64,000 nucleotides of DNA from Haplodiscus bocki (taxonomy: Eukaryota): positions 134,044,001-134,108,000 of the forward strand of contig OZ296650.1 of assembly GCA_965655095.1 (NCBI GenBank), in the 5' to 3' direction. The notes beneath the pieces are model-generated. The model did no database searches. It worked only from the letters and a program-made list of their open reading frames with translations, and was not told the DNA's origin. Below, piece by piece: positions 10,467 to 48,995 of this stretch. Position 1 is the first letter of the stretch. Every line of letters starts with the position of its first letter. Both the position numbers and the translations under genes were made by a program.

Positions 10467-10547
10467 TCGCAATATCCATTCTGACAAGACTGCTGAAACC
10501 ATTTTCGGTTGTGCACAATGTTTCTGCGTACGCGTTGGATCCCAACT

Positions 10548-10626
10548 GCTTCGACTGCATAGTGAAGCGTTGACAGAGTTCCCTTCCTATATTCTGTATA
10601 AATTTGCATCGACTGCACAGTGTTGC
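10548..10626 (+). repeat. 21-nt hairpin repeats after polyprotein stop (unit 1)
   Basis: gcttcgactgcatagtgaagc (10548-10568) and gcatcgactgcacagtgttgc (10606-10626); weak third copy near 10663. Confidence 0.75.
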
Positions 10627-25529: not shown

Positions 25530-26445
25530 TACCTTAGAGAAACACTGAAAAACCACTTTTGAATTGCTTCGTCGACTGTGAAATGTGACGAAGTGAATGC
25601 CTTCTTACAAAAAAAACGTAAAGTTCATTATACAATCAACACATAAAATAAATTTTTAAACGTCCAACGTATAGTATATCTTCAATTGTTTCCGTTTGTT
25701 TCCAAAGTTGCACGTGTAAAGTTTCTAGTATGTGTGTTTTTGCTTTTTGCTGTGTTTAAGGAACGCTGAATTTGTTATTTCTCAATGTTTTACCTTTTAT
25801 TATTTACAACAATTCAATTGTTCGTTTTGTGATGTCTTTGAGAGTAGTCTGCCGAGTATTTAGCCAACATACTCTTTTCCTTTCGGTTCAATGTTTAAGT
25901 AAATTTAACATGAAACTTTCTCGACAATTTTTTTTGCGGAAAAGAATTTGCTGCAGTTTCAGCATGCATTTTTTAACGTTAAAATGGGTACATCAGGTGT
26001 TCATAAAGTGCCCCTTAACAATGAACGTTCCTTATTGCCCACTATATGTAATGTTGATTGATTACAAAATTTATTTTTTTCCAATTGCATTTTTCGCATT
26101 TGCTTATCTAACACTTTGTTTTGTGTATGCCATAACAACGATATACTCCCAGACAGTGTATGATAAAAGCCATGTACTTCGTCCTGTTTCGACCGCAAGG
26201 TGAAACACTTGGTAAAACGTTAGTGAAACTTCAATACCAAAAAGCAGACACTCAAACGAGCAAATATATATTTAGAGCTTCTGGAACAATGTTATTTTCA
26301 GCTTTTGCGTTTTATACTCCAATATAATGCTAATGACAGTTATCTTTTGTGTTCCATCATAGTGTACCTATGCTGTTGGAATCATTAATTGTCTGTTTTT
26401 TGTCGTCGCTCCCCGTCGTTGTTTTTTAACGTTCTGCAGATGTAA

Positions 26446-27210
26446 ATGAGACATCTTATCATAGCTGATTCTCTTGGGAGAAGACTTGTGAGGAAGCACG
26501 AAAAGCTGGAAGTGAAGTTTTTTCCTGGTGCCACGGCATGCTGCCGTCGGGTAATTGACTGTCTAAGAAACCTCACAACGTTTTATGAATCAATCATTCT
26601 GTTCATTGGGGGAAACGGACTTACGAGCCGGGGTAGACAACGGGGAAAGACTCCTGAGCAGGTGAGTAATTTGTCCAACATATTGTCAAATTGGATGCGA
26701 ATGAAAACATTTTAGGAAAATAGTGGTTCCAACAACAGGGTTCTTTGTCTATGAATTGATACGCAGGTGATATTTCCCTCCGAAAGCATTTTCCTACTAA
26801 CAAGCAGATCTTCAATTGGAACTAAAAGTAGTTTCTTTTTTTTTCTCCAAAATTTGAATAAAGTTTGACAAAACCAAACGAAACGCATGTTCAGCTCAAA
26901 AAATTTCGTTAACTCTTAGGTGGTTCGAGACATTATGTACCTCGTGCGTCTGGCCACTCCAATGTGTTACAGAGTATACTGTCTGGCTCTAGTCATGAGA
27001 TCCAAACCGTGCCTCCTAGATATCAAAATTGTGAACGATGGACTCAGAAACTCTTCCGGTCCATAAAATTTTGTGTCTGTGGCTAGCAAAATGAGCTCCG
27101 AGAGGAATTTGATGGATGGCGTGCATTTATCTCGTCACGGTGTTTCCAACTTGATGTACATTCTAGGGAAAAGAGTTTTGGGTACTGTACTACGTTTTTC
27201 TTACCAGTGA
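26446..27210 (+). pseudogene. Two-exon SGNH/GDSL hydrolase-like gene with premature stop
   Basis: Exon 1 26446-26661 (IIADSLG, FPGA, IGGN), intron 26662-26919 (GTGAGT..TTAG), exon 2 26920-27210 (DGVHL). TAA at 27064-27066 where unit 3 has Tyr. Confidence 0.8.
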
Positions 27211-28534
27211 TAAGTACAAATAACGAAGCTTTCGTGAAGTAGTTGTTGATTAATCAACGCAGTCTCTAACATGGTACCCTGCGTTTCATTTTTTGGTAAT
27301 GGCGTTTTTGTTCTCTTTCTTCTTCTTTGTTTCTTTTAGAGTATCAGAGTTGACTGGAAAGTTGTCATAATGTGACCGACAAAATTGTGATCAATTGTAA
27401 TTGTTTATTGTCCACTGTTTTAACAGAGCGACGCGGAATACGTACACCTGCTCATTGTCGACTGGGGTTCTGAAAGCAATCACATCCTTTTCCAGCTGAA
27501 AAAGAAATAAAAGTCTGGTGGTAAACCTGGACGACCAATGTTATGAGAGCTTCCTTCGGTATATTCGATTAAACAGATATTCCTATTTTATCGCGCAGCA
27601 AAAAATTGGGAGTTATTGGTTGTTTTAATGTGCATACAATTCAAATGGACTTTAAAGTGATCTTAATTTCTAGTTTTCGTAACTTCTCAACAAAATTAAA
27701 AGATTTTTTTGATTAAATGTCAGTTTAATCCGTGAAACCTTTGAATTTGGCATGTTGCGTTTTTTTTCTGTATGTTAGATTCTTTCAGTTACGTTTTCCC
27801 ATAAACTTTGAATACTGCAAACCCATGAAAATTGCTCTTTGTTCTGCGTTGTTTTTATGCCTGTTACTTTTTCATAGCTAAATGAACTTTTCATTGAGAT
27901 GAAACATTCCACAGATTACTTCCCGTAAAATATCGTTTTATGTAGCTTCGATTCAACTTCATTTGTTTAAGTCAAAGAACTGCCGATTGTTTCATTTCTT
28001 TTGAATTGCTATCCTTGTCTGTGCAATGAATTGTTTGTTTTTAAAACGAATTGCATTCATGCTATACTGGTTTCCACATAAAAAGACACTTTTATCCTGA
28101 ATTAACACGTTTTCAATCCGTATACTGTTTTCATTTGCATTTACAGCCGTTAATATTCTGTGAAAATTCATTGAAGAATGAAATTGTGACCAAACATACC
28201 CATCATTCACTAACGACTGAACCTTCAGACCGTTGAGACGTGGAAAAAAAGTTGAAAAAAGTCAGTTCCACATTTTGCGTGGCATCACGTAGTGAAACAT
28301 GTGAATTTTTTCAACAGAAAAATAGCAAGAACTTTGTTATCGAACCGTTTCATGTATACTAACAATTGTCACTGTGACGTGGAAATTTAATGAAGTTGTG
28401 TTTCATCGTGTTCAACGTCATCTTCTTTGTTTTGCTTTTGAAAACAATTAGTTCTGCGTCCTGAATAGGTTTACAAAATGTCACTGTGTAAACCGCGTTG
28501 TATAAGATGATGATTGAAAAGATTGTTCCAGATT

Positions 28535-29545
28535 ATGACCACCCATGTCAATACGGCCCAAATAACTGCTCCCAATTTCTTGCGCAACAGTGAGAACACG
28601 TATATCCGAGGTGTTGTTTTGGTTTTTAAAAAATTTGATCGTCCCCTACAGTTATTTCGACCGCAAGCTGTAAAAGCTAAAAGAATGACCCCTGACACAA
28701 ACTATGATCGCCTAATCATCATCGGCGAAATCCAGACGCGAGAATGCTTTGCAATAATAGCAGATTCTGCGCAGAAAAGTTCACTCCTTTTTGTTGACCG
28801 AAAATTAACTATTGGTGCCATCGTTGATGTGAAAGAAGCTATTTTTTCCAACTCCTGCCTTGGTAACGATCGAACCAATCCAATTTTCAACGTGTCTCTT
28901 CCGTTAGAGGTAGTTATCGACGACCTGCCAATGGAGCCTATTCCTATCGATTTGAATCCCTCGACGGGTGCAATGTTCCACTTCTGTCTCCCACACCGAC
29001 CCCTTTCGTTTTTGCACGCTATTCCTGTGTTTCCGACTTGTTCCGGTTTTTTGTGCGACAGAAGAAATAGAAAAAACGAAAGCATTTGTGCATGTTTGCA
29101 AAAATCAACTTTGTCAGCATGGGTCATGTCAGCAAGGGTAGTTAGTCAGGACATATTGAACGAAGACGATGATCCTCTAACAGGGGATATTCTGCAAAGT
29201 TTGTCATTGACCAAACTTTTTTGTGAGGAAGCTATCATTAGATCGGCATACACATCAATTGACAGGGGACTTTTGAGAGAAGCCGTCATGCGTGTTGCTA
29301 ACCATGTTAATAACAATGGTGGGTGGAGAGTGTCAGGCTTCTACAAAACTGCTTTAACAGAAGAAAACATTGCGCAAAATGTTCAAAGGGTGAGAATTTG
29401 TCGAATCACTCCAGCGATTGAGATCCCTGTGAACTTGAAGTACAATGTGATTCCTTGGAATGGAGATGATACAAACCAGCCACCACGCCTTTTTCACGCT
29501 AACGCAAATTTGCCGGCAAGTAACAATGCAAACAACATGAGATGA
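28535..29545 (+). CDS. Conserved 336-aa accessory protein (unit 2 variant)
   Basis: ATG at 28535 aligns with the starts in units 1 and 3; intact; shares YDRL, CLGNDR, MFHFCLP, CSGFxCD, NGGW..GFYK, AQNVQRVRIC. Confidence 0.85.
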   Translation: MTTHVNTAQITAPNFLRNSENTYIRGVVLVFKKFDRPLQLFRPQAVKAKRMTPDTNYDRLIIIGEIQTRECFAIIADSAQKSSLLFVDRKLTIGAIVDVKEAIFSNSCLGNDRTNPIFNVSLPLEVVIDDLPMEPIPIDLNPSTGAMFHFCLPHRPLSFLHAIPVFPTCSGFLCDRRNRKNESICACLQKSTLSAWVMSARVVSQDILNEDDDPLTGDILQSLSLTKLFCEEAIIRSAYTSIDRGLLREAVMRVANHVNNNGGWRVSGFYKTALTEENIAQNVQRVRICRITPAIEIPVNLKYNVIPWNGDDTNQPPRLFHANANLPASNNANNMR

Positions 29546-34470: not shown

Positions 34471-37400
34471 ATGTCAAAACAAAACAACAAAGGAAACTTG
34501 AAGCGTCGTCGTTGTACTTCCTGTGGACAATTTGTTGGAGAACATCATGTGTGTGCAAAATCAATTGAGCTGGAACTTCAGGTCAACGAGCCTTTAGGAA
34601 TTTTATACAAAATTCCCGATGCATCAGTTGCTGTGTCACCTACCGCGAGAACGGAGATACACAGCTCGCTGAACACTTTGGGGTTGATGGACTTTTTAAA
34701 GCCTACAAAAACAGCTATCGGAAACGATACAGTTATCTGCTCCATGCAGCCAGTCCGGGTAACAGCAGTGCTTGGGGACGGTAATTGCCTTTTTTCTTCT
34801 CTGGCAGTTGCTCTGGGACTGTCACATGAATGTGGCCCAATCATACGTAACATTATTGTCAGCCACATGAATTTAATCAGTTTCCCCCCTAATAGCCTGC
34901 AAACATCTGTTTACTCCGATGACTTTCCCAACCAACATCGTGTTTTGAGTTGTACTTCCGTCGATGAGTACCTCCGCGAATCTAGAATGGCAGAAAATGG
35001 TGTTTTTGGAAGCTGTGTAGAAATATATTCATTTTGCCAAATCTTCAAAGTAGATGTTTTTTTGTACCATGTTCCATTCAAATCCTGGATGATTTATGAA
35101 TGTTCCTCCAACGTAAATAGAAAAGGAATTTTCATTCCACAAAACCGGAATGCAAATCACTTCGAGGTGATAACAGAGCTGGTTTCAATTGGTCCTGAAA
35201 GCTCCAGCTTATCGCAAGTTGCATCAATTAATCGCCCTCCTTCTCAATCAAGCGAAACTAATCATTGGAGTCAAGCCTTGCAGAACTGCGAAGGAACTGA
35301 AACTGAACCAGCTTCGAAAAAAAGCAAAGTCAATTCTGATTACACCTGGGAAGAGCACCCTGACCCGCTCGCATTAAGTCTCTTCGCCAATTCTGTATCT
35401 ACCAAAATGAAGAAACTTTCGGCCTTGGAAACATTATCAACAAATTCAACGAACCTCCCAAAGAACGATTGTTCACAAATGCTGGAACCCCCATGTTTTG
35501 ACTTTTCCCCAACAGATAGTGTTTCAGGAAATATGCACACGAACGGCGAGTGCCCAAATTTGGGCGGATGTGACTGTTGCGCAAAATGCATGCGCCAGTC
35601 AACAGTTCTTTACCCTTTAAAGTTGAAGAGGAAGAATAAATTTGATCTTAAAAACCGTGTGTTTGGAAACAAGCTAACGGAGCCCATTGTTGTTTTATGT
35701 AAGCTCTGTCTTCTCTATTGCACAACCGAAAGTTATGATTGGTACAATGCTTGGCCCTCTGTGTTTTTCAGCCTATTGAGTGATCAAGACATGCCAGTTA
35801 GAACCCAAATGGATATTTTGTCTTTGTTACCTTGGGAATTGAGACAGCAGTGGATGACATCCATGCACTACTTTCCCCTGTGCGTTCAAAGATGTCTAAG
35901 TCGGAAACGGATTGCTGGGAAATGTTCCGTTGATGGGACGCTTCGTTTGCGTCGTTTCCACGAACTCATGAAAACCTTGAAGCAGACTAACATTGCTCTT
36001 GCCCTGGACAATGAACCTTATCCCAACGTCCGCTGCCCATATGGGTGCTGGTGTTTCATTGAAGAATCAGGTTGGATACCCGCAAATCACTTCATCAATC
36101 TTTTTGAAAGAAACTTTACCTCGTTTCAGTCCTCCAGCTTCCTGCATCTAAGAGGAATTAGGTCCGACTTTTTGACACCATTTGTGTCCCTGCGCCAGTT
36201 CTTAGTAGCGACTACAGTGCGAGTTGATGAAAAAGCGGGACTCGTGGTTCAGGCTTGCTCCAGGCACTCAAGAGGCTCCAGTGTGCAGTACTTTCATCCG
36301 CCATCACATCCTTCGCTGGTGCGAACTACAGTGAATTATGAAGAACGTCTTAGTGCCATCGCACCCACATTGTCGTTCATCTCAAGCATAAAAGCCAACT
36401 TCGCCAGTCATACGTACCAATTGCTAAGAAGTGTTGGCTCTTACAGTGGAATGAGCACAGTCCGATTGAAGCGGAAAACGCGCTGGGATTTCACTAGTGA
36501 CATTTTGTATCATGCTGAAGGCGTCGCTTGTCATTTCAGAGAAGACATCAAAACAATGATTCGTGAGTGGGTAAGACAGGGTAAAATCCTTGATGACGTA
36601 GCTTCGGGAATGCTGGATTATGTACCGGACAAAAAGAAAGTCAACAGTTGTTTGTCACAGGCCACTTCAATAGACTTACAAACATGCCTGAACCTCACGA
36701 AAATAGTGGAAATGAATGAAAAAGAATATCTCAACAATGTTGAGTCGTTGAGTTGTTACACTCTCGTTCATGGGAATGATGATTACGGCTGCTCTCCACC
36801 TCCTCTGGAAAATAGAGTAAGCATAGTATCGTGGATTGTGCAGGCTGCAGTTTGTGTTTCCCCAATACTTTGTCGATCCTTAGTGAAATCATCAAAATAC
36901 AGTGTGACACTTAGGCCTTTGTTCACTTTACTCAGGAAAGTGTTGCTTGGCACCGCAAGAATGAATACAGCAAAAGTTTTATGGCTTGTTAGAAAATCCG
37001 AACAAGCAGTCTCAGCTGTCATAGAACAAACTAACACTGATGACAAAACAGAGGGAACAACCGACTGTTGTTGTTTTGTAGGAGCAAGGTTTCTTTCAGA
37101 AATTTGTGACACCATTCAACACGTTCCCTTAAACAAACGGAAGAATATCGGTTCAGCCACAACAGAGCAAGTTTCGTACAACATGACTCATGCCATTTTT
37201 ACGACAGGTTCCCCAAAAAATTTGCGGAACAAGGTGAAACCACCGTTAACCCTGATTATTTCCGACAATGAATTCGAATTGATTGCAGTTGGAACGAAGG
37301 ATGGAAGCAGCAAGGGAGAACCGAGGTGGTTGGTTAGACATGGAGGGAGGTTTCAGGGGTTTTGGCTCATTGAGAAAAGTAAAAAATTTGCCACAAAAAC

Positions 37401-40400
37401 AGAAGGCTCTCCGACTGATGCCCTGGAAACTTTCATTCGGGGTTATTGGACAATTGCAATTTATCAAAAGTCAAGAAATGTTGAATTGATTGATTTGAAG
37501 TGGAAATTTCTGAGCACTTTGACAGGTCAGGGTATTTTTATTTGTGCACATCACACAATTCCTTTAACAAGAGATTTCAGAAACAGTGGTTTCCAATGTA
37601 GATGTAATCGTGCATCGTTTTTGCGCTGCCCGCATTTGCAGTGCTACTCTTGCGTTTGCAAGCGTCTTTTCAATGAAGGTCTACAGCAGCAACACAGACG
37701 TATTTTAATTGATTCAGTACCGTTGGAGAAGTTAAATAAAACTAATTCCCCTTCTCTGGTATCGGAATCATCTTCGTCACGGGATTTTATTGAGCCCAAC
37801 AGCATGCCTGCAAATGAACCAATTCAACCAGATGCGGCAGCAGAAACGCTTGACATTGCATCAAGCAACAGTTCGTCCGTCAGTTATATTGTTCATCCGG
37901 AAACAAATGACGAAGAATTCGAAGATGACAACTTGAGAATAATGGCTACATTAAAAACCAACTCAGATGAAAAACTGATTTCCGTGGATCTTGAACGAAA
38001 AGAAGATGCCTTCAAACTACCGCTCCATATTCTTTTAAACTCACAATGCAATCTTCTTTATCGACGTAACGGGAATCCAATCAGCCTTTCTCTGAAAGAA
38101 AAACGTTTCCTGGAAAATATTTCAGCTGTTTCGACGTCTGCATTACCGCTCATTCAACCCGAAGCTCTTCTTTTTCCATCGATTTTTTGGTGTCAAGCTA
38201 GCAGCGGCAGTTTTCCAGGAGCAATACCAACGGCTTTATACAATTCATCCAAGTACAACAAACAGCTGGGTTTCGCCGGTTTGGATGACATGCTTCGAAC
38301 TCGAATCAAGGACGGCTCTCTTTTGACATCTTGCAATCCTACTTATTTGCAGTATGTGTTTGATTGCCTCTTGAACATGCAGCTTCATAAAAGTGACATT
38401 AGGATAATACTAAATCGAGGATGGCAAGAAGTTAATTCGGTTCCTCATAATTGCTCTTTTCTTTCGACTCAAACTTTCAAGTTTGATTGTGCCGAAAGTC
38501 GAAAAAATGTCTGCGAACTTGCGGCTTTGATTACAGACAAAAATCCAACCTACTTTGTGACATACACTTGTAGTCAATCGACCCACCCGGGGATTCGCAA
38601 AATCTTTGAAGCACTGCATGAAATGTATCCCGCAGAAACCACTCCAAAGGAAGTACTTGCAGCAGCAATTCAAGCTGAGCTCATGCCCATGCTCAGGTCT
38701 TGGTACCGCGCCTCTCAATATGTAATGGAATGGGTGAAAAATTCACCAGAAGAACCACTTGGTCCTGTGTCTCATATTTGGATGAGGTACGAATGGCAAG
38801 AAGAGACAGCTGGCTTTCCACACTTGCATGCTATATTGTGCACACCAGAAGATAAATTTAGTGATGATGTACGATCTCGAGTTTGCTGTTCAAAACAAAC
38901 GTTTTTGGGTGGCTTAGAAGTCAGTTGCCCCGAATTGAACGCAGTCGAACGTTTCCAACTGGGTAAACTTTACCAAAAGTATCAAACCCATAACTGTTCG
39001 AAAGGCCGTAAACGTTGCCATAAGAAGACAGACAGGCTGGACAAACCAATTTGTCGTGTACCTAAATATCCTCCTTCGAATTGTTTTTCTTTCAAGGAAA
39101 TTCCTGTGAACTTTTCCTGCGAAACAATGGGACTTCTGCGAGAAATGGAACTGGCAGACATAGATGAAAACTCGCTATTCCCAAAAGTGAAAGATCCTTT
39201 AACGGCCGGAAAACATCATTATCCCACTGTTTCTAACGAACATTATTCACCAACGAACGCTGCTCTTTTTGCTTTGACACAATCCAGCACCAATGTTCAA
39301 ATATGTGACGACTACATGGCCCCCCGCTACGTTGCAAAATATGCAGCCGGCATTGAATCTCGAGCAGTTGCCAAAATTGTTGCTGGTGAAACAGAAAATA
39401 GTGTCAAAGTTTTAACAGAACCAATCGCACATGAAAAAATAGCTGGGGTACAGGCTTCGCAAAAGAAAATGAGAGGCGATGAAAAACAAAAATCGGTAAC
39501 TGGTCGTGTGGTCAGCATAACAGAGTGTCTCTGGTGGTCCTTACAGCTTCCTTATGTCTGCACAAATGTCGATTTTGTTCACGTGCCAACTGTTCCCAAA
39601 GAAAATCGATCTGGAATTATCACTGAAAAACGCTTTAGCAATAAAATTAAGTTGGGCGCCACGTTTATGGAAGGAATCCGAGTTCGGAAACACGTTTTAC
39701 AACTTCCAAAGCACCGGCAGTTCACAAGAACACAAAGTTTTCTTCTTGCAGATGTTGAAAACAGCTCTATTTCGCCAGACAAAGTAACAGTTTTTGGACT
39801 CCGCCCACCTGAACTTTTGTTTGTCTCGAAGTTAAAAAATTACTACAGTTGGTTTGTTCGTTGTAAACCGCAAACAAAAAAATCCATCAGCAATCATGAA
39901 GTGTTCTTGAAGAGAAGCTTCCGCAGAAGTTGTTGGGTTGATGCATTGGGGTATTTGGTTAAACTACGCCCTTGTTCAGTGGACGCTTTCGTAAATTTCT
40001 GTCGTGCAAATGGTACCGATGGACGGGATGGGATTCTGAAACGCGAAATGAGAATACACATTGTTCCGTTGCTTGTGACGAAAAAAGCATCACAATTTGT
40101 TGCTCACTGGAAGCAGTTGTCCGAAGAAGATGCCGTGGTTGTTTTCAGTAACGTTTTGCCGAATAACCCAACTAAATTTCTACTACATGTGCTCTTGACT
40201 AATGGAGAATTTGACACAGAGATGGACATTCTGAACGTGCAGTCTTTCAAAGAAGCTTTCACAACAGCTAAAATTATTCCAAGCTGTAACATAAACGCCA
40301 AGACCGTGCAAAATTTAACACGGAATTATTTGCTGAAACAGCTGCGTTTTGTACCTGGGTCCTCGAAACTAATTGACAAATACCTTTTAATGGCTCACAG

Positions 40401-42528
40401 TGTTCTTTCAGAGGCTCTGTTAGTAAACATCCTTTATTTCGCTGCTGCGCTACCGCCTGTGCTGGACAGAAGTGTCATTGAAGAATACGAAGAATCACTA
40501 GCAGTGCAAATCAGTATGGAAAAATGCAAAATGGTAGCTTTTCTTCACACTTGTCAGAAACAATTACCTACTGAGCAGGCGATGCTAGATGCAACCATCA
40601 CCGTCCCTTTACCTTGGAAACCAGTCATTCAGAAAAGCCCGGATCAATGTCGAAACTCTTATACGGAACAGAAGAGTGTATTAAACAAACTGTTGAGTTC
40701 CATCGACATTTATAAAGAAGGACTTTGCAGTTTCATCAGGCATCAAATTGTCTTTGGACCTCCAGGAAGTGGGAAAACTTTCGTTGTGCTAAAATCGCTT
40801 GCATATGCTTTATGCCAAGGTCTCAACTGTGTAGTGACATCTTTGGCTGCTGAAAGATCTGCCGCTTTGGCTGGAAAACATCTGAATGCCCTCATCCCAT
40901 TTCCAGTGGAAAAACACGCTTCTGCAGAATCGCTCTCGAGAACAGCCCTGTCCAACCTACAACGATCTCCTATTAAGAGCCGCTTTCTGCAAAATCTACA
41001 CGTTCTTTTCGTGGAGGAATTGTCAATGATTTCTAGCGAACTTTGGGCTGCCACGGATTATGTGCTTCAGGTTATCACAGCAAACTATGTTCCATTCGGT
41101 GGGAAACTTGTTATTGCAACCGGAGATTTCTTCCAACTTCCTCCACCATCAGGATCTTGTTTGATGAGTTCTTCTTTTCCTCTCACAACGTTCACTTTTC
41201 TCAAACTGGAAAATTTCGTTCGCATGCAAAACAAAAATGGCCAAGAACTGTTGTCTTTGTTGTCAGCGACTCCAAAAACTGACGGCAATGCGAGGCGTAT
41301 CTGGGAAATTATCGGTAAAGGTTGCAATTTTGTCCATTCATGGAAAGACGTGCCGAATGATAGAATTCGAATTTTTGCCACTCGACAAGCAGAACGTAAA
41401 GCAACTGAAGACAAAATAATCGATGTTAAAAACAGCGGTACCCAATTTTATGAAAATGCGGCAATTGATGAAATGTGCGTTTCAAGCACTGACAACTGGA
41501 CCGAGGCGTCGCCAAGTACATCAAAATTTCTCAACAAAAAGTGTCTTGAACCCCAGTCGTTGTTTCTGTACCCCGGAGCCATTTTACGACTAACAGTGAA
41601 TATGCCATCTATATCCGCGTATCAGGGTCAACTCTGTGTTCTGCTTTCTTTGGATACAATTCAGAATGGCTCTGTGACAATTGCTCTAGCACCAGCTGGT
41701 TGCCGAAGTATTCCACCGCTTGTTGTGATCAAAAACAAATGGCGTTGTGTTGTTATCGGCAAAGAAACTGGTGTTACCTACCGATTAAACCACAAAACGG
41801 TTTGCAGACGAATCCAGTTTCCACTAAATTTATTTGTTGCGTCAACCATTCATAAGACAATGGGTGAAACGCTTCCGATGGTCGCAACCCAAATAGTTGG
41901 ATCGAAAGACTTCGCTTTGTGGCTTCCCGAACAACTCTATGTTGTAATGAGTCGAGTAAGAAGTCTGAATCAGGTGACTTTTGTTGGATCGAAGGAATCT
42001 AACAAACGAGCAGTCTTGGATTTAGTCTGCAAAAATTCGCAATGGGCTGAACTCACGAATGAAATTTTGACTAAAAGTTCCGCTGGTGACCCTACAATTG
42101 ATCATGCAAGAGCATCTCCTTTTCCCCCTTCAATGAGAGAACTACCCGTTCAAAATGTGGGCTTCTGTTACTTGCTCCAAAGTGAACCACAGCAGCACCT
42201 TCTGTACATTGGCTCCACTATGTCGTTAGTGCGTCGTTTGCGAGAGCACAATGCAGGACTGGGTTCCTCCTTCACCAAGGTACAAAATCGTTTGCCCTGG
42301 ATGGTTTGTGCTTATGTTACTGGTTTCAATTCGATTAATGCTTCAGAGAGAATCCGAGCATTCGAGAAGGAGTGGCTGAATGCGGCAACACACTACGTCA
42401 ACGCAAAAAAGAAAAATGTGTCACTTCCCACAGCTATCAATTTGGGGGAAATTGTCGCAAAAAATTGGCTATACAAAGAAGATGATTTGAAACTAGTAGT
42501 GTGCTGCAGGTCATCAACTGTGTCTTGA
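34471..42528 (+). CDS. Intact ~2685-aa RepHel-type transposase: Zn knuckle, OTU protease, Cys-rich region, HUH/Y2 Rep, Pif1-like helicase, GIY-YIG nuclease
   Basis: OTU GDGNC (34774-34788) and NHF (~35158). Rep FVTYTC (~38554), YEWQEETAGFPHLH (38788-38829), YVAKY (39328-39342). Walker A GPPGSGKT (40756-40779), EELSM (41014), GDFFQLPP, TIHKTMG, QLYVVMSRV. GIY-YIG GFCYLL..LYIGST..RRLREHN..W...FEKEW (from 42160). Confidence 0.93.
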   Translation: MSKQNNKGNLKRRRCTSCGQFVGEHHVCAKSIELELQVNEPLGILYKIPDASVAVSPTARTEIHSSLNTLGLMDFLKPTKTAIGNDTVICSMQPVRVTAVLGDGNCLFSSLAVALGLSHECGPIIRNIIVSHMNLISFPPNSLQTSVYSDDFPNQHRVLSCTSVDEYLRESRMAENGVFGSCVEIYSFCQIFKVDVFLYHVPFKSWMIYECSSNVNRKGIFIPQNRNANHFEVITELVSIGPESSSLSQVASINRPPSQSSETNHWSQALQNCEGTETEPASKKSKVNSDYTWEEHPDPLALSLFANSVSTKMKKLSALETLSTNSTNLPKNDCSQMLEPPCFDFSPTDSVSGNMHTNGECPNLGGCDCCAKCMRQSTVLYPLKLKRKNKFDLKNRVFGNKLTEPIVVLCKLCLLYCTTESYDWYNAWPSVFFSLLSDQDMPVRTQMDILSLLPWELRQQWMTSMHYFPLCVQRCLSRKRIAGKCSVDGTLRLRRFHELMKTLKQTNIALALDNEPYPNVRCPYGCWCFIEESGWIPANHFINLFERNFTSFQSSSFLHLRGIRSDFLTPFVSLRQFLVATTVRVDEKAGLVVQACSRHSRGSSVQYFHPPSHPSLVRTTVNYEERLSAIAPTLSFISSIKANFASHTYQLLRSVGSYSGMSTVRLKRKTRWDFTSDILYHAEGVACHFREDIKTMIREWVRQGKILDDVASGMLDYVPDKKKVNSCLSQATSIDLQTCLNLTKIVEMNEKEYLNNVESLSCYTLVHGNDDYGCSPPPLENRVSIVSWIVQAAVCVSPILCRSLVKSSKYSVTLRPLFTLLRKVLLGTARMNTAKVLWLVRKSEQAVSAVIEQTNTDDKTEGTTDCCCFVGARFLSEICDTIQHVPLNKRKNIGSATTEQVSYNMTHAIFTTGSPKNLRNKVKPPLTLIISDNEFELIAVGTKDGSSKGEPRWLVRHGGRFQGFWLIEKSKKFATKTEGSPTDALETFIRGYWTIAIYQKSRNVELIDLKWKFLSTLTGQGIFICAHHTIPLTRDFRNSGFQCRCNRASFLRCPHLQCYSCVCKRLFNEGLQQQHRRILIDSVPLEKLNKTNSPSLVSESSSSRDFIEPNSMPANEPIQPDAAAETLDIASSNSSSVSYIVHPETNDEEFEDDNLRIMATLKTNSDEKLISVDLERKEDAFKLPLHILLNSQCNLLYRRNGNPISLSLKEKRFLENISAVSTSALPLIQPEALLFPSIFWCQASSGSFPGAIPTALYNSSKYNKQLGFAGLDDMLRTRIKDGSLLTSCNPTYLQYVFDCLLNMQLHKSDIRIILNRGWQEVNSVPHNCSFLSTQTFKFDCAESRKNVCELAALITDKNPTYFVTYTCSQSTHPGIRKIFEALHEMYPAETTPKEVLAAAIQAELMPMLRSWYRASQYVMEWVKNSPEEPLGPVSHIWMRYEWQEETAGFPHLHAILCTPEDKFSDDVRSRVCCSKQTFLGGLEVSCPELNAVERFQLGKLYQKYQTHNCSKGRKRCHKKTDRLDKPICRVPKYPPSNCFSFKEIPVNFSCETMGLLREMELADIDENSLFPKVKDPLTAGKHHYPTVSNEHYSPTNAALFALTQSSTNVQICDDYMAPRYVAKYAAGIESRAVAKIVAGETENSVKVLTEPIAHEKIAGVQASQKKMRGDEKQKSVTGRVVSITECLWWSLQLPYVCTNVDFVHVPTVPKENRSGIITEKRFSNKIKLGATFMEGIRVRKHVLQLPKHRQFTRTQSFLLADVENSSISPDKVTVFGLRPPELLFVSKLKNYYSWFVRCKPQTKKSISNHEVFLKRSFRRSCWVDALGYLVKLRPCSVDAFVNFCRANGTDGRDGILKREMRIHIVPLLVTKKASQFVAHWKQLSEEDAVVVFSNVLPNNPTKFLLHVLLTNGEFDTEMDILNVQSFKEAFTTAKIIPSCNINAKTVQNLTRNYLLKQLRFVPGSSKLIDKYLLMAHSVLSEALLVNILYFAAALPPVLDRSVIEEYEESLAVQISMEKCKMVAFLHTCQKQLPTEQAMLDATITVPLPWKPVIQKSPDQCRNSYTEQKSVLNKLLSSIDIYKEGLCSFIRHQIVFGPPGSGKTFVVLKSLAYALCQGLNCVVTSLAAERSAALAGKHLNALIPFPVEKHASAESLSRTALSNLQRSPIKSRFLQNLHVLFVEELSMISSELWAATDYVLQVITANYVPFGGKLVIATGDFFQLPPPSGSCLMSSSFPLTTFTFLKLENFVRMQNKNGQELLSLLSATPKTDGNARRIWEIIGKGCNFVHSWKDVPNDRIRIFATRQAERKATEDKIIDVKNSGTQFYENAAIDEMCVSSTDNWTEASPSTSKFLNKKCLEPQSLFLYPGAILRLTVNMPSISAYQGQLCVLLSLDTIQNGSVTIALAPAGCRSIPPLVVIKNKWRCVVIGKETGVTYRLNHKTVCRRIQFPLNLFVASTIHKTMGETLPMVATQIVGSKDFALWLPEQLYVVMSRVRSLNQVTFVGSKESNKRAVLDLVCKNSQWAELTNEILTKSSAGDPTIDHARASPFPPSMRELPVQNVGFCYLLQSEPQQHLLYIGSTMSLVRRLREHNAGLGSSFTKVQNRLPWMVCAYVTGFNSINASERIRAFEKEWLNAATHYVNAKKKNVSLPTAINLGEIVAKNWLYKEDDLKLVVCCRSSTVS

Positions 42529-42626
42529 AAAGTCGTACTTTAGGAGAAAGCTGCCCAAAAACTTATGGATTAGTTTGAGATAATTGTTTTACTTGCACAC
42601 AAACTTCCTTGCCTTGACAGCCATAC

Positions 42627-42772
42627 GCATCGACTGCATAGTGATGCAATGGTGAATTTCTCTTTATGTTATGCTGCAACCGCATCGGCTGCAGAGTGAT
42701 GTACCAAGTAGCACGTGCAGCAACATCAACCTTTTTGCTGGAAAATATAATGCCTCGACTGCATAGTGTTGC
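42627..42772 (+). repeat. Three 21-nt hairpin repeats after polyprotein stop (unit 3)
   Basis: gcatcgactgcatagtgatgc (42627), gcatcggctgcagagtgatgt (42682), gcctcgactgcatagtgttgc (42752). Confidence 0.8.
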
Positions 42773-43105
42773 ATTATCTATTTTGCAGTTGAGATGATTT
42801 GTTGCTAATCACTTGTCTGTGTCTGTTTAATTCATTAGTTTGATGGGATTCACTTTCACTGAACCTGATTTGATGGACTTTGATTTTGGAAGCACTAGAA
42901 AGAGTCCATTTAAAAAAGCGCCGTTAATTTTGGACAATAGAAATCAGCTAACTTTCAAGTTTTTTCGGGAAAAAAATATAATCATACGTTAAATGACGAA
43001 TTTTGACATTGTTGATTGAAGCACTCTTGTTACTGTATCCCCGTATTCGGGGATGATACCTGAAGCTGCAGAAACCGACGTTTTTCACAGTGCTTCCAGA
43101 TCATT

Positions 43106-43858
43106 ATGGCTCATTTGATCATAACCGACTCTCTGGGCGTACAACTGGAAGGTGTGCTTGAAAATTTGGCAGTTAAAAGTTTTCCTGGCGCCAGAGCGGC
43201 GGACCGACGTGTAACGAGTTTCCTGGAAAATTTGCGGCGCCGCTTCCAATCCATTACAATTTTCATTGGAGGGAATGGCCTTTCCAATTGGGGCCGGCGT
43301 CCAGCTGAAAGTCCAGAACAGGTAAAGCTTAAGTGATGGTTCATGGGGTTACTGTTTGCAAAATCAAATTAGACGCTAGTAAAATTTGGAACGTTTTTGT
43401 GTATTGTTAAACCCTTTATTGAAGTACGTTTAGTAAAAATCTAGGAAAACGTTGTTTTCAATATTAAGTCTTTCTACTGGTACTTTAACTGGTGCTACTT
43501 GCAAACTATAATTGAACCGTAACTTTGTGTTTTTAATGTCTCAACAGTACTTCATTTGCTTTTGTTGTTTTATTATTAGGTGTTCCATGATATCTTGAAC
43601 CTTGTGAGAATTGCCGAGAGAAAATGCGACAAAGTATACTGCCTGGGCTTAGTAATGCGAAGCCGACCGTGCTTCCTTGCAGTGAAAGAAATAAACCGAA
43701 TGCTGCGAACATCCATTGGACACTACACTTACGTTTCCGTGTCATCTAAGATGTCATCTGAAAGAAATCTTAAAGACGGAGTGCATCTGTCTCAGCACGG
43801 CGTGACGAACATCCTGTGGATTATAAAAAGACGGATTTTAGGTAACAAATGTGTCTAG
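43106..43858 (+). CDS. Two-exon SGNH/GDSL hydrolase-like protein, 164 aa, intact
   Basis: Exon 1 43106-43321, phase-0 intron 43322-43579 (GTAAAG..TTAG), exon 2 43580-43858. Blocks IITDSLG, FPGA, IGGN, DGVHL give the S-G-N-H signature with DxxH. Confidence 0.85.
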
Positions 43859-44342
43859 CAGTACATTAAGATGTTGAAAAACAGTATTGATTCCAGTAAT
43901 TTGCGGTTGATATCAACTTTCCAGCAATTGAATGTTTCTAGCTTTAAACTCTTTGGAATTTACCTATAGAAGGTTTACGTTTTTTCCATAAACTTCCATT
44001 CTAACACCAATGTCGTTTAGGACACTCAATCAGGAGACTCTCCCATCGCAAAAACCGCTACGTCCACTGGAAGTGGTGAAGATCCGGCCCTGTGTTGTTG
44101 TAGGCTTCATTTGGACATTTCTGGAAAATGGAATTACAATCTTGGTCGTTGCACCTATGTTTCGAATACTCTTGGTAGTTTTTTCATGATGACACAATTT
44201 TGAAACTTTTTTTGGTGGTACCATTAAAAACAAACAAAGGTGCTTTTTTGGTTTCCAATAATCTTGGCCAATTGACGCCGCTAACAGTGTTTTAATTTTG
44301 TTTTCGTGTCCTCTTCGATTTGTAATTTGTCAGTGATAAAAT

Positions 44343-44548
44343 TGTAAAAAAGCTCGACCGCATGGTGGCCTCTACTTCTTTGAAGTTTTGAATTTTTTTT
44401 GTTCCACACACCTTGCATTTTGGCGTACATTACAACATATTTATTATTTTAAACTTTGTCTTCATGCCTCATTCAATTTAAAGTTGGTTTGTGATGACGT
44501 TGTAAGGAGTTCAACCGCATGGTGATCTGTACCTCTTTGAATTTTTGA
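44343..44548 (+). repeat. Imperfect ~48-bp direct repeat, ~158-bp period
   Basis: accgcatggtggcctctacttctttgaagttttga versus accgcatggtgatctgtacctctttgaatttttga. Confidence 0.6.
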
Positions 44549-45300
44549 TGCTTCGTTGTCATTGGAACATTTTTTTAATGGTCGCCGTCCGCTATTAGTC
44601 GTCACAATTCCTTCATGTTTTCGCTGAAATAGTGTACTCCATAGTTACATTGTTTGTTAAAAACTTTTGGTAGTTTAAAATTTCGAAAGTGATCAACTAA
44701 CCTCGGCCATACTGTTACAAGGATTGTTCATATTATTTTGAATAAAGTTTTCTTTTGAAATGTTTGTTCTTATATTCGCAAAAAACGTTATAGCAAACAT
44801 TGTGCAGCTTTGAGCTCGTATTAAACTTCAGTTGTCGAACATCTGCAATGAAGATATAATTTATAATCCTTAACTTTCTACAAGTTTTGTAGACAGGAAA
44901 AAAACCGATGTAATAACGATGTATTTGAATGCATTGCTCACCATTTTTTTTCTTTTGCCTTGAGTGTTACTGATCGATAAAGCGTGATGCGTTGAACAGT
45001 AAGATAACTGTAAATGTAACATAACATTTCGATGAAATAAACTTAATGATAAAGAAGATTTGAGAAATGTGAATAATTGAGAAACTTGTCATGCTTTTTT
45101 GAAAAACAGGTTGCTTTACTTGAAGCAATAGCGCTAATTCACTGGATTAAATGCTTGAAACCAAAATTACTTGCCTGTTGACTTCATTGAACCTTATAGG
45201 AAAATGCGTTCACAGAATCTTTAAAAAAGGAAAAAGCATGGTTTTGAATGTTCCAATTGTTCAATTCTCAGGCAGCTTCAACCACGTTTGATTTCAGACT

Positions 45301-46311
45301 ATGACAACTCAAGTGAACACCTCCCAAGTAACAGCACCAAATTTTTTGCGACGAAGCGAAAATACATTCGTCAGAGGTATCGTTCTAGTAATTAAGAAAT
45401 ACGACAAACCTTTGCAGTTGTTTAGACCGCAAAATATCAAAAACAAGAGAGGTGCCCTCGATACCAGCTGTGATCGATTAGTCATACTAGGCGAGATCAA
45501 TTCAAAAGAATGCTTTGCTGTGATTGCGGAGTCTGCACAGAAAAGCTATTTTTTGTTCGGGGACACTCTGTTAACAGTAGGGTCAATTGTGGACGTAAAA
45601 GAACCTGTGTTCTCGAACTCTTGTCTCGGCAATGACCGCAGTAATCCAATTTTTCATGTCTTTCTTCCTTTGGAAGTCGTGGTTAACAATATTCCATTGT
45701 TGCCAATTCCCATAGATCTCCACCCATCAACGACAGCAATGTTTCACTTTTGCTTGCCAAACAGACCCCTCACCTTCTTACAAGCAGGTGCTGTAGCTCC
45801 AACTTGCTCAGGCTTCATGTGTGACAGACGAGAAAAACGAATTGACTCTGTATGCCCCTGTATACAGAAATCTCCTGTTTCAGCTTGGGTAATGTGCGCC
45901 CGAATTGTCAGTCGTGACATCGAAAATGAAGACGAAGATTCCCTCACGGGAGAAATGATACAAAGTCTTAACCTGACAAAACTGTTTTGCAGCGAAGCAA
46001 TTATTAGAAGTTCATATGCATCAATCGATTCGCAACAACTGCGGATTGCTGTTAACCAGGTGTCCCAATTTGTAAATGAGAATGGTGGTTGGCAGGTATG
46101 TGGATTTTAAAAAAGTGGATCCACAGACGAAAATCTTGCACAAAACGTACAACGTGTCCGCATTTGCAAAATTACGCCTGCCGTTGAAGTTCCTTTTAAC
46201 TTGAAATACAACATTGTGCCATGCAACGCCAATATTGGCAATGAGCCCCCAGCTTTGCAACATGCGGATACTAACGTCGGTGCTCCTAACAATCCGAACA
46301 ACGTACGATAG
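45301..46311 (+). pseudogene. 336-codon accessory gene with one nonsense codon
   Basis: Near-identical to 11320-12330; TAC>TAA at 46108-46110; frame continues to TAG at 46309-46311. Confidence 0.85.
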
Positions 46312-47335
46312 CTGATCTAGACTTACTCCTCAGATGACCGTTCTTTCTCCACCGCATGAACTGCTTGCTGGTTTTCAAAACCAATCTCTCCTTTCGCAAT
46401 CGACCGCAAGGTGGTTGCTGAAAAAAACATGCACAAATTAACAAGTTTCGGAAAAAAAGTCAACTGATAAAGTTGTCCTCGTTCTTTCATACCACAATTT
46501 GTTCTCCTCCTTTTCAATCTTGAAACCTATGCTTCAATTTTCTTGTTAATGATAAAGTTTAACTTTCCAGTACTTATCAGTACCCAAAGGTTAATTGTTG
46601 GTTTTTGTGGAACTGTAAACACTAATGTCAAATTACAAATTAGTTGTTGTTGAACAATGGAAATTAGTTTGCAACTGCCGACGACTTGTCTCTGTAAACC
46701 TACGTTTTTCAGTAGCTTAGAACATTGTGCTAATTCGTGTGGCTTTTGAGTGTGGTTTATTGGTTCGTGTAGAAGTTGTGAACTTTTTATGTTATGCAAT
46801 TAACTTCTTTCTTGTTATGTTAAACATTACTATCCGTTCATGACCGAACGTTTTGAACTTTGAAACGCTGGCTTGCTCTTCCATCGGTCGAAGTGCACGC
46901 TCTCAGTTCGTTGCTTGACGTTTGATACAGTGTTGTAATTTTCGCTAACAGAAGAATGGGATCAAACTTTCATACGAAATTTTAGGGAAATTTTTTTCTG
47001 AAGTCCATACAGGTTCATTTGGTTCATTCGGGTTGTTTTCACAAAGTAACAGCTGGGAACCTACTGCCTACAAATTGACAACATTGATGCGAAACTTTTT
47101 GAGAAAGTTAAAACACTTTCGCTGGTCAAATTTTGAAAGTATTCGTTCGGACAAAAATTTTAGTTTTCCTTCCCAGAAACTCATCAAACTTGAAGTTGTT
47201 TGTTAAAGGAACAGTTGCTCTCCGAGAATTGCGGGCAAAAATTCCTGCCGACGTTTCACCATACGCCTGTTTAAGTGTTATATTCAAATTCTACAGCAAA
47301 AATTGATTTTTTTCTGATTTTTGTTTTTTTTTCCA

Positions 47336-47950
47336 AAAAATTCGTCATAACCGTCATTTTTTTCGGCAAAGTGGCCGAAACTTTTTCATCTTCGGAAAAT
47401 TGCCTTTGAAGTTATGGAGTCGATTTCATACTGGAGCCACTCCAGAGGGCAAACTATGCACTTCAATGTGGGAGCTATGACGAAATGGTCGATTTTCGGC
47501 ATTTTTTTCCAACTTTGATCCGTCATATCTCAACACCTATGACGAGTTGGTAGAAAATTTTTTGCATGTGTGTAGCCCTTAGTTATACTGCTTCACACGA
47601 AAAGTTTCGGCCAAATGCATGTGGTTCCTTGCAGGGCTGTCGGTAAAAAACTGCAAAATGAGGCCAAAAAACAGAATCATCTCGTCATAATTCCCCAACC
47701 ATTTTTGCTAGAATGATCTAACTTGCACCATTGTTCTTAGAATTGAAAGTTATGCCCGCATGCAAAGTTTGATCAAAATCGTATGGGTGGGAGCTGAGAT
47801 CGTTATTTTCCTATACCGTATTTGCATAGAGTTATTTCTTATATTTTAACGCGAGGCAAAGGGGCCCCTCCCCCGCCTCGCCTGGACCTATGAGGGGCGT
47901 AATCCCGTGACCACCCAGTGGAGGCACCGGTGAAAATCACCAGGTGGCGG
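47336..47950 (+). repeat. Terminal module, unit 3
   Basis: GCGAGGC-aaaggggcccctccccc-GCCTCGC hairpin (47851-47881), CCACccaGTGG, GGTGAaaaTCACC. Confidence 0.85.
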
Positions 47951-48995
47951 TCACTGGTTATGCCATTCTGAAATTTGAACAAATTTGCTAGTGTTTTCTT
48001 TCAACACAGTAATGATTTTTGCAAATGCAAATTTTATATATTGAAATTTAGCCTGTGAAAACTTTACCGATCTGGATGACACATCCATGATGGAGCTTGC
48101 AAACATTTTAGCCCCGTTGTTTCTCCGTGTCGCTTCGCTAATCTACGAAACAACGGGGCGGGGCAATTAACATTTTGGCAATTGTGGTGAATTTTTTAAA
48201 CAGAAATGCATCAAAGTTTGATTTTTTTTCGCAGAATGACTTTTACTCCAAATTTTACCCCAAGTTGAAGAATCATTTGCACCAAAGCAGTTTGCGAAAA
48301 AAATCCGACCACAAAAATATCAGAAACGAACTCTACGGGGAAAATTGAGTTTTCTGCTAAAAAATTTTTTTTTTTCGGAAAATTCGTCATAACCGTCATT
48401 TTTTTCGGCAAACTGGCCAAAACTTTTTCATCATCGGAAAATTATCTTTCAAATTATGCAGTCAATTTCAGACTGGAGCCAGTCCAGAACGCAAGCTACG
48501 TACTTCAATGTGGGAGCCATGACGAAATGGTCGATTTTCGGCATTTTTTTCCAAATTTCATCCGTCATATCTCCACACCTATGACGAGTTGGTAGAAAAT
48601 TTTTTGCATGCGTGTAGCCCTTAGTTATTCTGCTTCACACAAAAAGTTTCGGCCAAATGCATGCGGTTACTTGCAGGGCTGTCGGTAAAAAACTGCAAAA
48701 TGGGGCCAAAAAACAGAATCATCCCGTCATAACTCCCCAACCAATTTTGCTAGATTGATCTAACTTGCACCATTGTTCTTAGAATTGAAAGTTATGCCCG
48801 CATGCATAGTTTGATCCAAATCGTATGGGTGGGAGCTGAGATCGCTAATTCCCTATACCGTTTGTGCATATTTGTTTTTTTCTTATATTTTAACGCGAGG
48901 CAAAGGGGCCCCTCCCCCGCCTCGCAAGGACTAATGTGGGGCGCGATCCCCTGACCACCCAGTGGAGGCGACGGTGAAAATTACCAGATGGCGGG
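47951..48995 (+). mobile_element. ~1.05-kb non-coding mini-unit (non-autonomous derivative or terminal duplication)
   Basis: ~430 bp of unique sequence with a 13-bp hairpin, then a second terminal module (48378-48995). Confidence 0.65.
48111..48159. other. Perfect 13-bp GC-rich hairpin
   Basis: GCCCCGTTGTTTC (48111-48123) and GAAACAACGGGGC (48147-48159); 23-nt loop containing CGCTTCGCT. Confidence 0.8.

What the first reader, a model, noticed from the sequence alone, without database searches (positions are those of the whole stretch)
43106..43858. Hidden spliced SGNH esterase with an intron of identical length (258 nt) in two diverged units
Seen: the ORF track splits this gene. Joining at CAG|GT..AG|GTG gives a 164-aa protein with all S-G-N-H residues. 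Exon 1 is 216 nt and the intron 258 nt in both units 2 and 3, although the intron sequences look dissimilar. Known: SGNH esterases occur in ORF1 of some non-LTR retrotransposons and in viral haemagglutinin-esterases. I know of none as a standing gene of a rolling-circle DNA transposon. Inference: a deacylase or membrane/lipid-interacting accessory factor.
Basis: partly seen in the sequence, partly recalled or inferred. Interest (0 to 1): 0.72.

Follow-up and report, generated by a model that had tools for sequence, protein, structure and literature searches.

The report
Small spliced esterase gene in Helitron
A giant rolling-circle (Helitron-like) transposon carries a small, selectively maintained gene in two coding exons for an SGNH-type esterase, related to the esterases of LINE retrotransposons; esterase genes next to Helitrons were already known from fish, and the "identical intron length" is a coincidence.

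Summary
The gene model is real as sequence. Exon 1 is 43106-43321, a GT..AG intron of 258 nt follows, and exon 2 is 43580-43858. Together they give 164 codons with Ser9, Gly28, Asn57, Asp138 and His141. Unit 2 has the same layout (26446-27210) but an in-frame TAA.

Intronless relatives align straight across the junction. Three further lineages, two of them in another organism, have an intron at the same phase-0 site. Coding sequence is under purifying selection while the intron is randomised.

An intronless relative folds confidently, and every top PDB match is an SGNH/GDSL hydrolase. The closest solved relative by sequence is the zebrafish ZfL2-1 LINE ORF1 esterase.

The gene lies beside RepHel-GIY-YIG ORFs in every lineage whose neighbourhood I could read, here and in the other organism, so it is a standing accessory gene. 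It is optional: units 1 and 4 lack it.

Intron length is not fixed: 203-268 nt in the two window clades, and 215, 445 and 555 nt elsewhere.

Splicing stays untested, since no RNA run was found.

The parts
43106..43321 (+). SGNH gene, coding exon 1 (72 codons). It holds block I (Ser9, codon at 43130), block II (Gly28, 43187) and block III (Asn57, 43274).
   Evidence: All 30 unit-3-type copies examined in the genome are intact.
43322..43579 (+). Phase-0 GT..AG intron of 258 nt. Reading through it gives a stop after 4 codons.
   Evidence: Intronless relatives are contiguous across the site. Three other lineages have an intron at the same site.
43580..43858 (+). SGNH gene, coding exon 2 (92 codons plus TAG). 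It holds block V, D-G-V-H (Asp138 at 43775, His141 at 43784).
43090..43099 (+). Splice-acceptor-like pyrimidine stretch plus CAG, 6 nt before the start codon. It may mark an upstream non-coding leader exon (inference).
26446..27210 (+). Unit 2 copy of the gene: exon 1 at 26446-26661, intron at 26662-26919, exon 2 at 26920-27210. It is broken by an in-frame TAA at 27064-27066.
34471..42528 (+). Unit 3 RepHel ORF (Rep HUH and Tyr motifs, PIF1-like helicase, C-terminal GIY-YIG nuclease). This is the transposase gene that the esterase gene follows.
45301..46110 (+). Third gene of the unit (ORF3, no known domain). It is conserved across lineages and in the other organism.
42495..44801 (+). A roughly 2.3-kb module holding the esterase gene. 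It is present in unit 3 and has no counterpart in unit 1 (10421-10819).

Best explanation
This is a real gene with two coding exons for a small (164 aa), strongly basic SGNH/GDSL-family serine esterase. It is carried as a conserved but dispensable accessory gene by a clade of giant Helitron-like elements whose transposase is a Rep-helicase with a C-terminal GIY-YIG nuclease.

Shown here:
- the exon-intron structure;
- an intron site conserved between lineages and between two organisms;
- purifying selection on the coding sequence;
- the SGNH fold of a close intronless relative;
- conservation of the Ser/Gly/Asn/Asp-His residues;
- kinship with LINE-borne esterases;
- repeated adjacency to RepHel-GIY-YIG ORFs.

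Inferred:
- The protein is made from a spliced mRNA, perhaps with an upstream leader exon, and acts in trans for the element family.
- By analogy with the ZfL2-1 ORF1 esterase it acts as an acyl-ester or lipid hydrolase and/or a binder of negatively charged membranes. Such a role could help nuclear access, localisation or transmission of the transposon.

The equal intron length in units 2 and 3 is chance within a slowly drifting length.
For: Gene model:
- tblastn finds both exons in units 2 and 3.
- Exon 1 ends and exon 2 starts on adjacent residues of intronless relatives: L063 at nt 1032/1033 and P0007 at residues 95/96.
- The same phase-0 site before a Val codon holds an intron in L085 (215 nt), L095 (445 nt) and L096 (555 nt).

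Selection:
- Unit 2 against unit 3 gives pS 0.81 (saturated) and pN 0.30, with the intron at shuffle level.
- Within the unit-3 clade, dN/dS is 0.21-0.41. Intron identity is 91% against 95-98% for the coding sequence. All 30 copies are intact with GT..AG kept.

Fold and family:
- The profile that includes the exons finds 1450 proteins.
- Its multi-domain hits carry Lipase_GDSL_2 above Pfam's cut-off in the matched region.
- P0002 models at pLDDT 95 and pTM 0.90.
- All 50 best PDB matches are SGNH/GDSL enzymes, or designed scaffolds placed among them, with E from 4e-7.
- The best profile hit in PDB is 4c1b, the LINE ORF1 esterase, at E 4e-4, with blocks I, II, III and V aligned.
- G, G, N, D and H are nearly invariant in the alignment.

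Linkage to the element:
- The gene lies next to RepHel-GIY-YIG ORFs in L070, L086, L087, L092 and L095 of another organism, and next to RepHel-like ORF pieces in L085 of this genome.
- RepHel is only 31% identical between L070 and the window.

Charge: 25 Lys+Arg against 13 Asp+Glu.

Analogy: the ZfL2-1 esterase is active on pNP-acetate and binds acidic phospholipids (PMC3905857).
Against: - No transcript evidence exists. No RNA run is on record, and the four runs laid look like DNA and show no joint.
- The window protein itself was not folded or searched as a whole. The fold evidence comes from a relative that is 25-34% identical.
- The single exons hit nothing in Pfam. Relatives reach only 14-21 bits against a cut-off of 32.9.
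- Block I reads T-D-S, not G-D-S.
- Units 1 and 4, whose RepHel is closer to unit 3 than unit 2's is, lack the gene. It is therefore not needed in cis.
- Gene order relative to RepHel and ORF3 differs between lineages.
- The enzymatic activity and any lipid role are inference only.
Confidence: 0.75

Rival explanations
1. Passenger gene. An esterase gene of host or LINE origin was captured and is merely carried along by the Helitron. It is kept for a host function (as proposed as one option for fish texim in spermatogenesis) or not kept for the element's own benefit.
For: - Helitrons capture genes, and texim was interpreted this way (PMC4021074).
- Units 1 and 4 lack the gene.
- Its position relative to RepHel varies.
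- It has an intron whereas the 2689-aa RepHel ORF has none.
- Its nearest relatives are LINE esterases.
Against: - It is linked to RepHel-GIY-YIG ORFs in every lineage whose neighbourhood was readable, in two organisms, although RepHel has diverged to 31% identity.
- Purifying selection is seen among multicopy transposon-borne copies.
- No solitary, single-copy host version was seen among the own-genome hits. They lie in arrays or in LINEs.
Confidence: 0.15
2. Non-catalytic SGNH-like module. The domain serves as a binding or structural module for nucleic acid or membrane, like Oskar's OSK domain, and not as an enzyme.
For: - The protein is strongly basic, about +12 net.
- One related ORF1-like protein also matches Pfam OSK.
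- Block I glycine is replaced (T-D-S in unit 3, A-D-S in unit 2).
- A residue that PMC3905857 calls transposon-specific in ZfL2-1 (H191) aligns with Phe here.
Against: - Ser, Gly, Asn, Asp and His are kept in all lineages, over divergence that has saturated silent sites.
- The closest solved relative is an active esterase (PMC3905857).
Confidence: 0.07
3. Intron length is itself under selection (a fixed 258-nt spacer), as the title of the finding implies.
For: - The length is 258 nt in both window copies although the sequence is randomised.
- Neighbouring spacers differ much more. RepHel stop to ATG is 577 nt in unit 3 and 916 nt in unit 2.
- Lengths in both clades stay within about 247-268 nt.
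Against: - Copies with introns only 9% diverged already differ by 5-10 nt: 258, 263, 264 and 268. One copy has 203.
- The nearest relatives of the unit 2 copy have 257.
- Homologous introns are 215, 445 and 555 nt in other lineages.
- A random walk scaled from the shallow comparisons predicts a spread of about 20 nt. A difference of 10 nt or less between the clades is therefore not unusual (my estimate).
Confidence: 0.08
4. Not a gene: two chance ORFs, or a dead fragment of a LINE ORF1 nested in the element.
For: Each exon alone has no Pfam hit, and there is no RNA evidence.
Against: - Both halves are colinear with full-length intronless homologues.
- Splice signals are conserved and dN/dS is well below 1.
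- All 30 copies examined are intact.
- No APE or RT is nearby, whereas the LINE-borne versions have them.
Confidence: 0.02

Closest known systems
texim genes of teleost fish (SGNH hydrolase genes associated with Helitrons; Tomaszkiewicz et al. 2014, PMC4021074)
   Same: - It is a predicted SGNH esterase gene lying next to a Helitron coding region, multicopy and spread with the element.
- It is reported as related to CR1 (LINE) esterases and to PAF acetylhydrolase. The same relatives appear here.
- In several lineages of the present family the esterase gene lies 5' of RepHel, as texim does.
   Different: - texim is multi-exon (15 exons for teximY), and the Helitron ORF lies 3' of it or in its last intron.
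- Here the gene has two coding exons and 164 codons. In the window it lies 3' of a RepHel that carries a GIY-YIG nuclease, and it is paired with a conserved ORF3.
- Sequence-level membership in the texim clade could not be tested, because no texim sequence was available to the tools.
- The host organism of this window is not known to me.
Esterase (ES) domain of LINE ORF1 proteins, e.g. zebrafish ZfL2-1 (PDB 4c1b; PMC3905857), and stand-alone esterase ORFs of LINEs
   Same: - It is the closest solved structure by sequence profile (E 4e-4, blocks I-V aligned) and a fold match.
- The family tree places the Helitron-borne proteins with a LINE-borne stand-alone esterase clade (97/92 support).
- Both are basic proteins.
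- The intron lies within a few residues of the hinge between the two half-domains described for ZfL2-1.
   Different: - It is not part of an ORF1 with coiled coil, PHD or CCHC, and no APE-RT ORF follows it (against the window).
- It has an intron.
- The residue equivalent to ZfL2-1 H191 is Phe.
GDSL esterase/lipase ORFs of rotifer Terminons and LTR retrotransposons (PMC6431247, PMC5408684)
   Same: Stand-alone accessory GDSL/SGNH ORFs recruited by large multi-gene transposons, together with GIY-YIG nucleases and Rep proteins.
   Different: Those are retroelements, and no sequence comparison was done here.
Cellular SGNH hydrolases (PAF-AH Ib alpha, sialate O-acetylesterase, CE3 acetyl esterases)
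   Same: The fold and the catalytic residues.
   Different: 12-21% identity only. The window protein is shorter (164 aa) and is transposon-borne.

Membership tests
SGNH/GDSL hydrolase superfamily | Four conserved blocks: Ser (block I), Gly (II), Asn (III) and His with Asp at -3 (V) | tested here: met
   Ser9 (T-D-S), Gly28 (P-G-A), Asn57 (G-G-N) and Asp138/His141 (D-G-V-H) align with the blocks of relatives and of 4c1b. The Gly of G-D-S is Thr in unit 3 and Ala in unit 2.
SGNH/GDSL hydrolase superfamily | Three-layer alpha/beta/alpha flavodoxin-like fold | tested here: inconclusive
   Met for the intronless relative P0002: pLDDT 95, and all top PDB matches are SGNH enzymes or designed scaffolds placed among them.
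SGNH/GDSL hydrolase superfamily | Score above Pfam's gathering cut-off for Lipase_GDSL or Lipase_GDSL_2 | tested here: not met
   The single exons give no hit. Relatives score 14-21 bits against 32.9. The link is transitive, through profile hits that do pass the cut-off.
SGNH/GDSL hydrolase superfamily | Ser-dependent ester hydrolysis | not testable with these tools
   This needs a recombinant protein and pNP-ester or lipid assays.
LINE ORF1p esterase domain | Domain of an ORF1 protein (with coiled coil, PHD or CCHC) followed by an APE-RT ORF2 | tested here: not met
   The window gene stands alone between a RepHel ORF and ORF3. True LINE versions show APE and RT downstream.
LINE ORF1p esterase domain | Closest sequence kinship among solved or known esterases | tested here: met
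   The best PDB profile hit is 4c1b. The tree groups the Helitron-borne proteins with the LINE stand-alone esterases.
texim (Helitron-associated SGNH genes of fish) | SGNH gene physically adjacent to a Helitron coding region in several copies or species | tested here: met
texim (Helitron-associated SGNH genes of fish) | Membership in the texim sequence clade; multi-exon structure; testis expression | not tested
   No texim sequence or RNA data could be reached. The exon structure differs: 2 coding exons against up to 15 (PMC4021074).
Helitron-like element (the carrier) | Rep domain with HUH and two-Tyr motifs, fused to a PIF1-like helicase | tested here: met
   PIF1 scores 42.9 bits (above cut-off) and Helitron_like_N 26.1 bits (just below) in the window ORF. 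Precomputed Pfam records list Helitron_like_N for the homologues in L070, L087 and L092. The H-L-H and Y-V-A-K-Y motifs can be read in the translation. GIY-YIG scores 37.3 bits.

The most novel reading that the evidence does not exclude
The esterase and ORF3 may be the 'late' or accessory genes of a virus-like expression programme. Both have a pyrimidine tract plus YAG a few bases before their start codons in most lineages, and RepHel does not. They might therefore be expressed by alternative splicing from a shared leader exon of the element. The esterase, inherited from or shared with LINEs, would then provide a membrane or lipid step, such as nuclear entry or cell-to-cell or horizontal spread, for a DNA transposon.
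Probability: 0.15. Interest if true: 0.75.

Novelty: new member of a known kind. Interest (0 to 1): 0.42.

Why it matters
Esterases of the SGNH type have now been found in LINEs, in Penelope-like and LTR retroelements, and next to fish Helitrons. Nobody knows what they do for a transposon.

Here the gene is small and intact, and it is selected in dozens of copies. It is linked to a rolling-circle transposase across deep divergence and in two organisms. That argues it serves the element and is not a chance capture. It also offers a compact protein for biochemical tests.

It links the esterases of DNA transposons and retrotransposons by descent. This points to exchange of accessory modules between transposon classes.

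Tried and rejected
- **Pfam on each exon alone:** no hit.
- **phmmer of a relative against PDB:** nothing meaningful.
- **RNA evidence:** no RNA run is on record. The four runs laid are contigs that also cover the intergenic DNA, with no joint, so they say nothing about splicing.
- **Complex prediction with the two exon products as separate chains:** no verdict, so it is no evidence either way.
- **The fetch from genomes:** As a result:
  - unit-2-type intron lengths rest on hit coordinates, not on sequences;
  - the own-genome context of the 198-aa LINE-type esterase could not be read. The LINE context was taken from other assemblies.
- **Cluster look-up:** gave no names or organisms, so the host species and any identity with texim stay open.
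- **Tree:** it did not resolve whether the Helitron-borne esterases are one clade.
- **Idea of a length-locked intron:** rejected.
- **Nested LINE fragment:** rejected, because there is no APE or RT nearby.
- **Joined model:** the joined 164-aa model was not searched, folded or saved. Only the codons of the two exons were pooled for dN/dS counts.

Full report
**What is there**

The window holds four head-to-tail, diverged (60-80% nt) units of 15-18 kb. Each has a very long Rep-helicase ORF. Only unit 3 has it intact: 2689 codons, with PIF1 helicase, a Helitron N-terminal domain just under threshold, and a C-terminal GIY-YIG nuclease.

The claimed gene starts 577 nt after the stop of that ORF.
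- Exon 1 is 43106-43321.
- The intron is 43322-43579 (258 nt, CAG|GTAAAG...TTAG|GTG).
- Exon 2 is 43580-43858.

tblastn with each exon finds one more copy in the window, in unit 2. It also has a 216-nt exon 1 and a 258-nt intron. Units 1 and 4 have no copy. Unit 1 lacks a 2.3-kb module (42495-44801 of unit 3). The DNA after that module is 87.5% identical between units 1 and 3.

**Is it one spliced gene?**

No RNA data could be found. No RNA run is on record. The four runs laid behave like DNA and show no joint. The case therefore rests on comparison, and it is strong.
- Intronless homologues exist in the same genome (L063, 202 codons) and in another assembly (P0002, P0007).
- The two exons align to them on directly adjacent residues: nt 1032/1033 in L063 and residues 95/96 in P0007. 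See also the alignment.
- Three more distant lineages have an intron at exactly this phase-0 site, always before a Val codon and with good GT and polypyrimidine-AG signals.
  - L085 in this genome: 215 nt.
  - L095 and L096 in the other organism: 445 and 555 nt.
  - That organism is different, since P0002's best match in this genome is only 52%.

**Selection**

Between units 2 and 3, silent sites are saturated (pS 0.81) while pN is 0.30. The introns are as unlike as shuffled sequence.

Among 30 unit-3-type copies elsewhere in the genome:
- all have both exons open and GT..AG kept;
- between subfamilies dN/dS is 0.21-0.41;
- the intron is 91% identical against 95-98% for the coding sequence.

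**Intron length**

The equality 258 = 258 is true for this pair but is not a rule.
- Unit-3-type copies have 258, 268, 263, 264 and 203 nt.
- Unit-2-type copies have 247-262 nt, and the closest relatives of the window's unit 2 copy have 257.
- Copies whose introns are only 9% diverged already differ by 5-10 nt.
- Homologous introns elsewhere are 215-555 nt.

I read the match as chance within drift.

**What the protein is**

The 164-aa protein was therefore never searched or folded as a whole.
- Each exon alone gives nothing in Pfam.
- A profile built from the exons and the intronless relatives (A3) finds 1450 proteins.
- Among them are LINE ORF1-like proteins with PHD, coiled coil and CCHC. 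Their matched region passes Pfam's cut-off for Lipase_GDSL_2.
- The small relatives give consistent sub-threshold GDSL hits.
- P0002 models at pLDDT 95 and pTM 0.90.
- Its 50 best PDB matches are all SGNH/GDSL enzymes, or designed scaffolds placed among them: sialate O-acetylesterase, PAF acetylhydrolase, CE3 esterases, OatA/PatB and the ZfL2-1 ORF1 esterase.
- By sequence profile, the best solved relative is that LINE esterase, 4c1b, at E 4e-4 with blocks I, II, III and V aligned.

In the window protein the residues are Ser9, Gly28, Asn57, Asp138 and His141. The protein is basic, with 25 K+R against 13 D+E. The same residues are kept in every lineage.

**Linkage to the element**

The esterase gene lies beside, and in the same direction as, a RepHel-GIY-YIG ORF (RepHel-like ORF pieces in L085) in:
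- L070, 3' of RepHel and followed by an ORF3 homologue;
- L086, L087 and L095, 5' of RepHel;
- L092, further 3' of RepHel;
- L085, where the order is RepHel-ORF3-esterase.

RepHel of L070 and of the window share only 31% identity. So the association is old and recurrent, the position is flexible, and the gene can be lost.

**Relatives in other transposons**

A very abundant 197-198-aa esterase ORF with a Cys-rich tail (at least 150 hits in this genome) is the first ORF of a LINE with APE and RT.

In a tree, these LINE esterases and the Helitron-borne ones sit together, apart from the multi-domain ORF1 esterases (97/92). Whether the Helitron-borne ones form a single clade is unresolved.

**What is known**

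- Tomaszkiewicz et al. 2014 (PMC4021074) described texim. These are SGNH hydrolase genes associated with Helitrons in several fish, related to CR1 esterases and PAF-AH, and expressed in testis. The authors left open whether they serve the Helitron.
- The HELIANO survey lists 20 domains stably carried by Helitron-like elements. GDSL/SGNH is not among the ones its text names (the full list is in a supplementary table I did not open). It notes a GIY-YIG domain in one moss family (PMC11417382).
- GDSL esterases are also accessory ORFs of rotifer Terminons and LTR elements (PMC6431247, PMC5408684).
- The ZfL2-1 esterase is catalytically active, binds acidic phospholipids and can open into two half-domains (PMC3905857). 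By alignment, the intron found here lies within a few residues of that hinge.

**Verdict**

It is an SGNH-family accessory gene of a Helitron-like clade.

It is not the first esterase gene found with Helitrons, and the intron-length coincidence carries no weight. What the esterase does for the element remains inference. My best guess is a trans-acting acyl-ester or lipid hydrolase, or a membrane binder.

Noticed in passing
window 43090-43105, 26432-26445, 45283-45300, 11302-11319; also L070, L085, L086, L095, L096 just before the esterase ATG: A pyrimidine-rich stretch plus YAG lies 2-10 nt before the start codon of the esterase gene. By a strict rule (chosen after seeing the pattern) it is found in 5 of 9 lineages, against a 4.7% background, P about 2e-5. 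The two window copies fall just short of the rule. The same motif lies before ORF3's ATG but not before RepHel's in 6 of 7 cases. This suggests non-coding leader exons or a shared spliced leader.
   Followed up: partly
G000:C3:133.80-134.31 Mb (includes the window); also C9:1.75-1.85 Mb, C9:18.6-19.0 Mb, C4:117.5-117.8 Mb, C23: The units form very long head-to-tail arrays, more than 300 kb on C3, with spacing of 15-19 kb. Units of different subfamilies (55-100% identical esterase exons) are interleaved in different orders. This looks more like repeated insertion next to resident copies than like simple tandem duplication.
   Followed up: no
L062:871-1461, L079:1501-2097; context in L089-L091: A highly abundant LINE family (at least 150 hits here) starts with a stand-alone 197-198-aa SGNH ORF with a Cys-rich C-terminal tail. 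A 298-aa ORF and an APE+RT ORF follow. Copies in this genome often come in same-strand pairs about 8 kb apart.
   Followed up: partly
window 10420-14010 against 42494-47950: Units 1 and 3 are 75% identical in the end of RepHel but 87.5% identical in the 3.2 kb that holds ORF3. Unit 3 has an extra 2.3-kb esterase module between the two. This points to module exchange or recombination between subfamilies.
   Followed up: partly
L016-L022, L026, L029, L030 (exon 2 end): In the subfamilies with 268-, 264- or 263-nt introns, the stop codon of exon 2 is replaced by Gln. The frame then runs on to 129 codons, giving a C-terminal extension.
   Followed up: no
window 11320-12330, 28514-29545, 45301-46110; L070:11413-12486; L085:7382-8473: ORF3 (about 270-360 aa, no Pfam hit) is conserved at 23-34% identity across lineages and in the other organism. 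Its order relative to the esterase gene is swapped in the L085 lineage. In unit 3 it is shorter (269 codons) than in unit 1 (336).
   Followed up: partly
window 43319-43582 (exon junction): By alignment to PDB 4c1b, the intron falls within a few residues of the hinge (R200-Q201) between the two half-domains of the ZfL2-1 esterase. Exon 1 would then encode the half with Ser, Gly and Asn, and exon 2 the half with Asp and His.
   Followed up: partly
window 47324-47623 and 48366-48665: A 1042-nt direct duplication (91% identical) lies in the 3' non-coding part of unit 3, with single counterparts in units 1 and 2.
   Followed up: no
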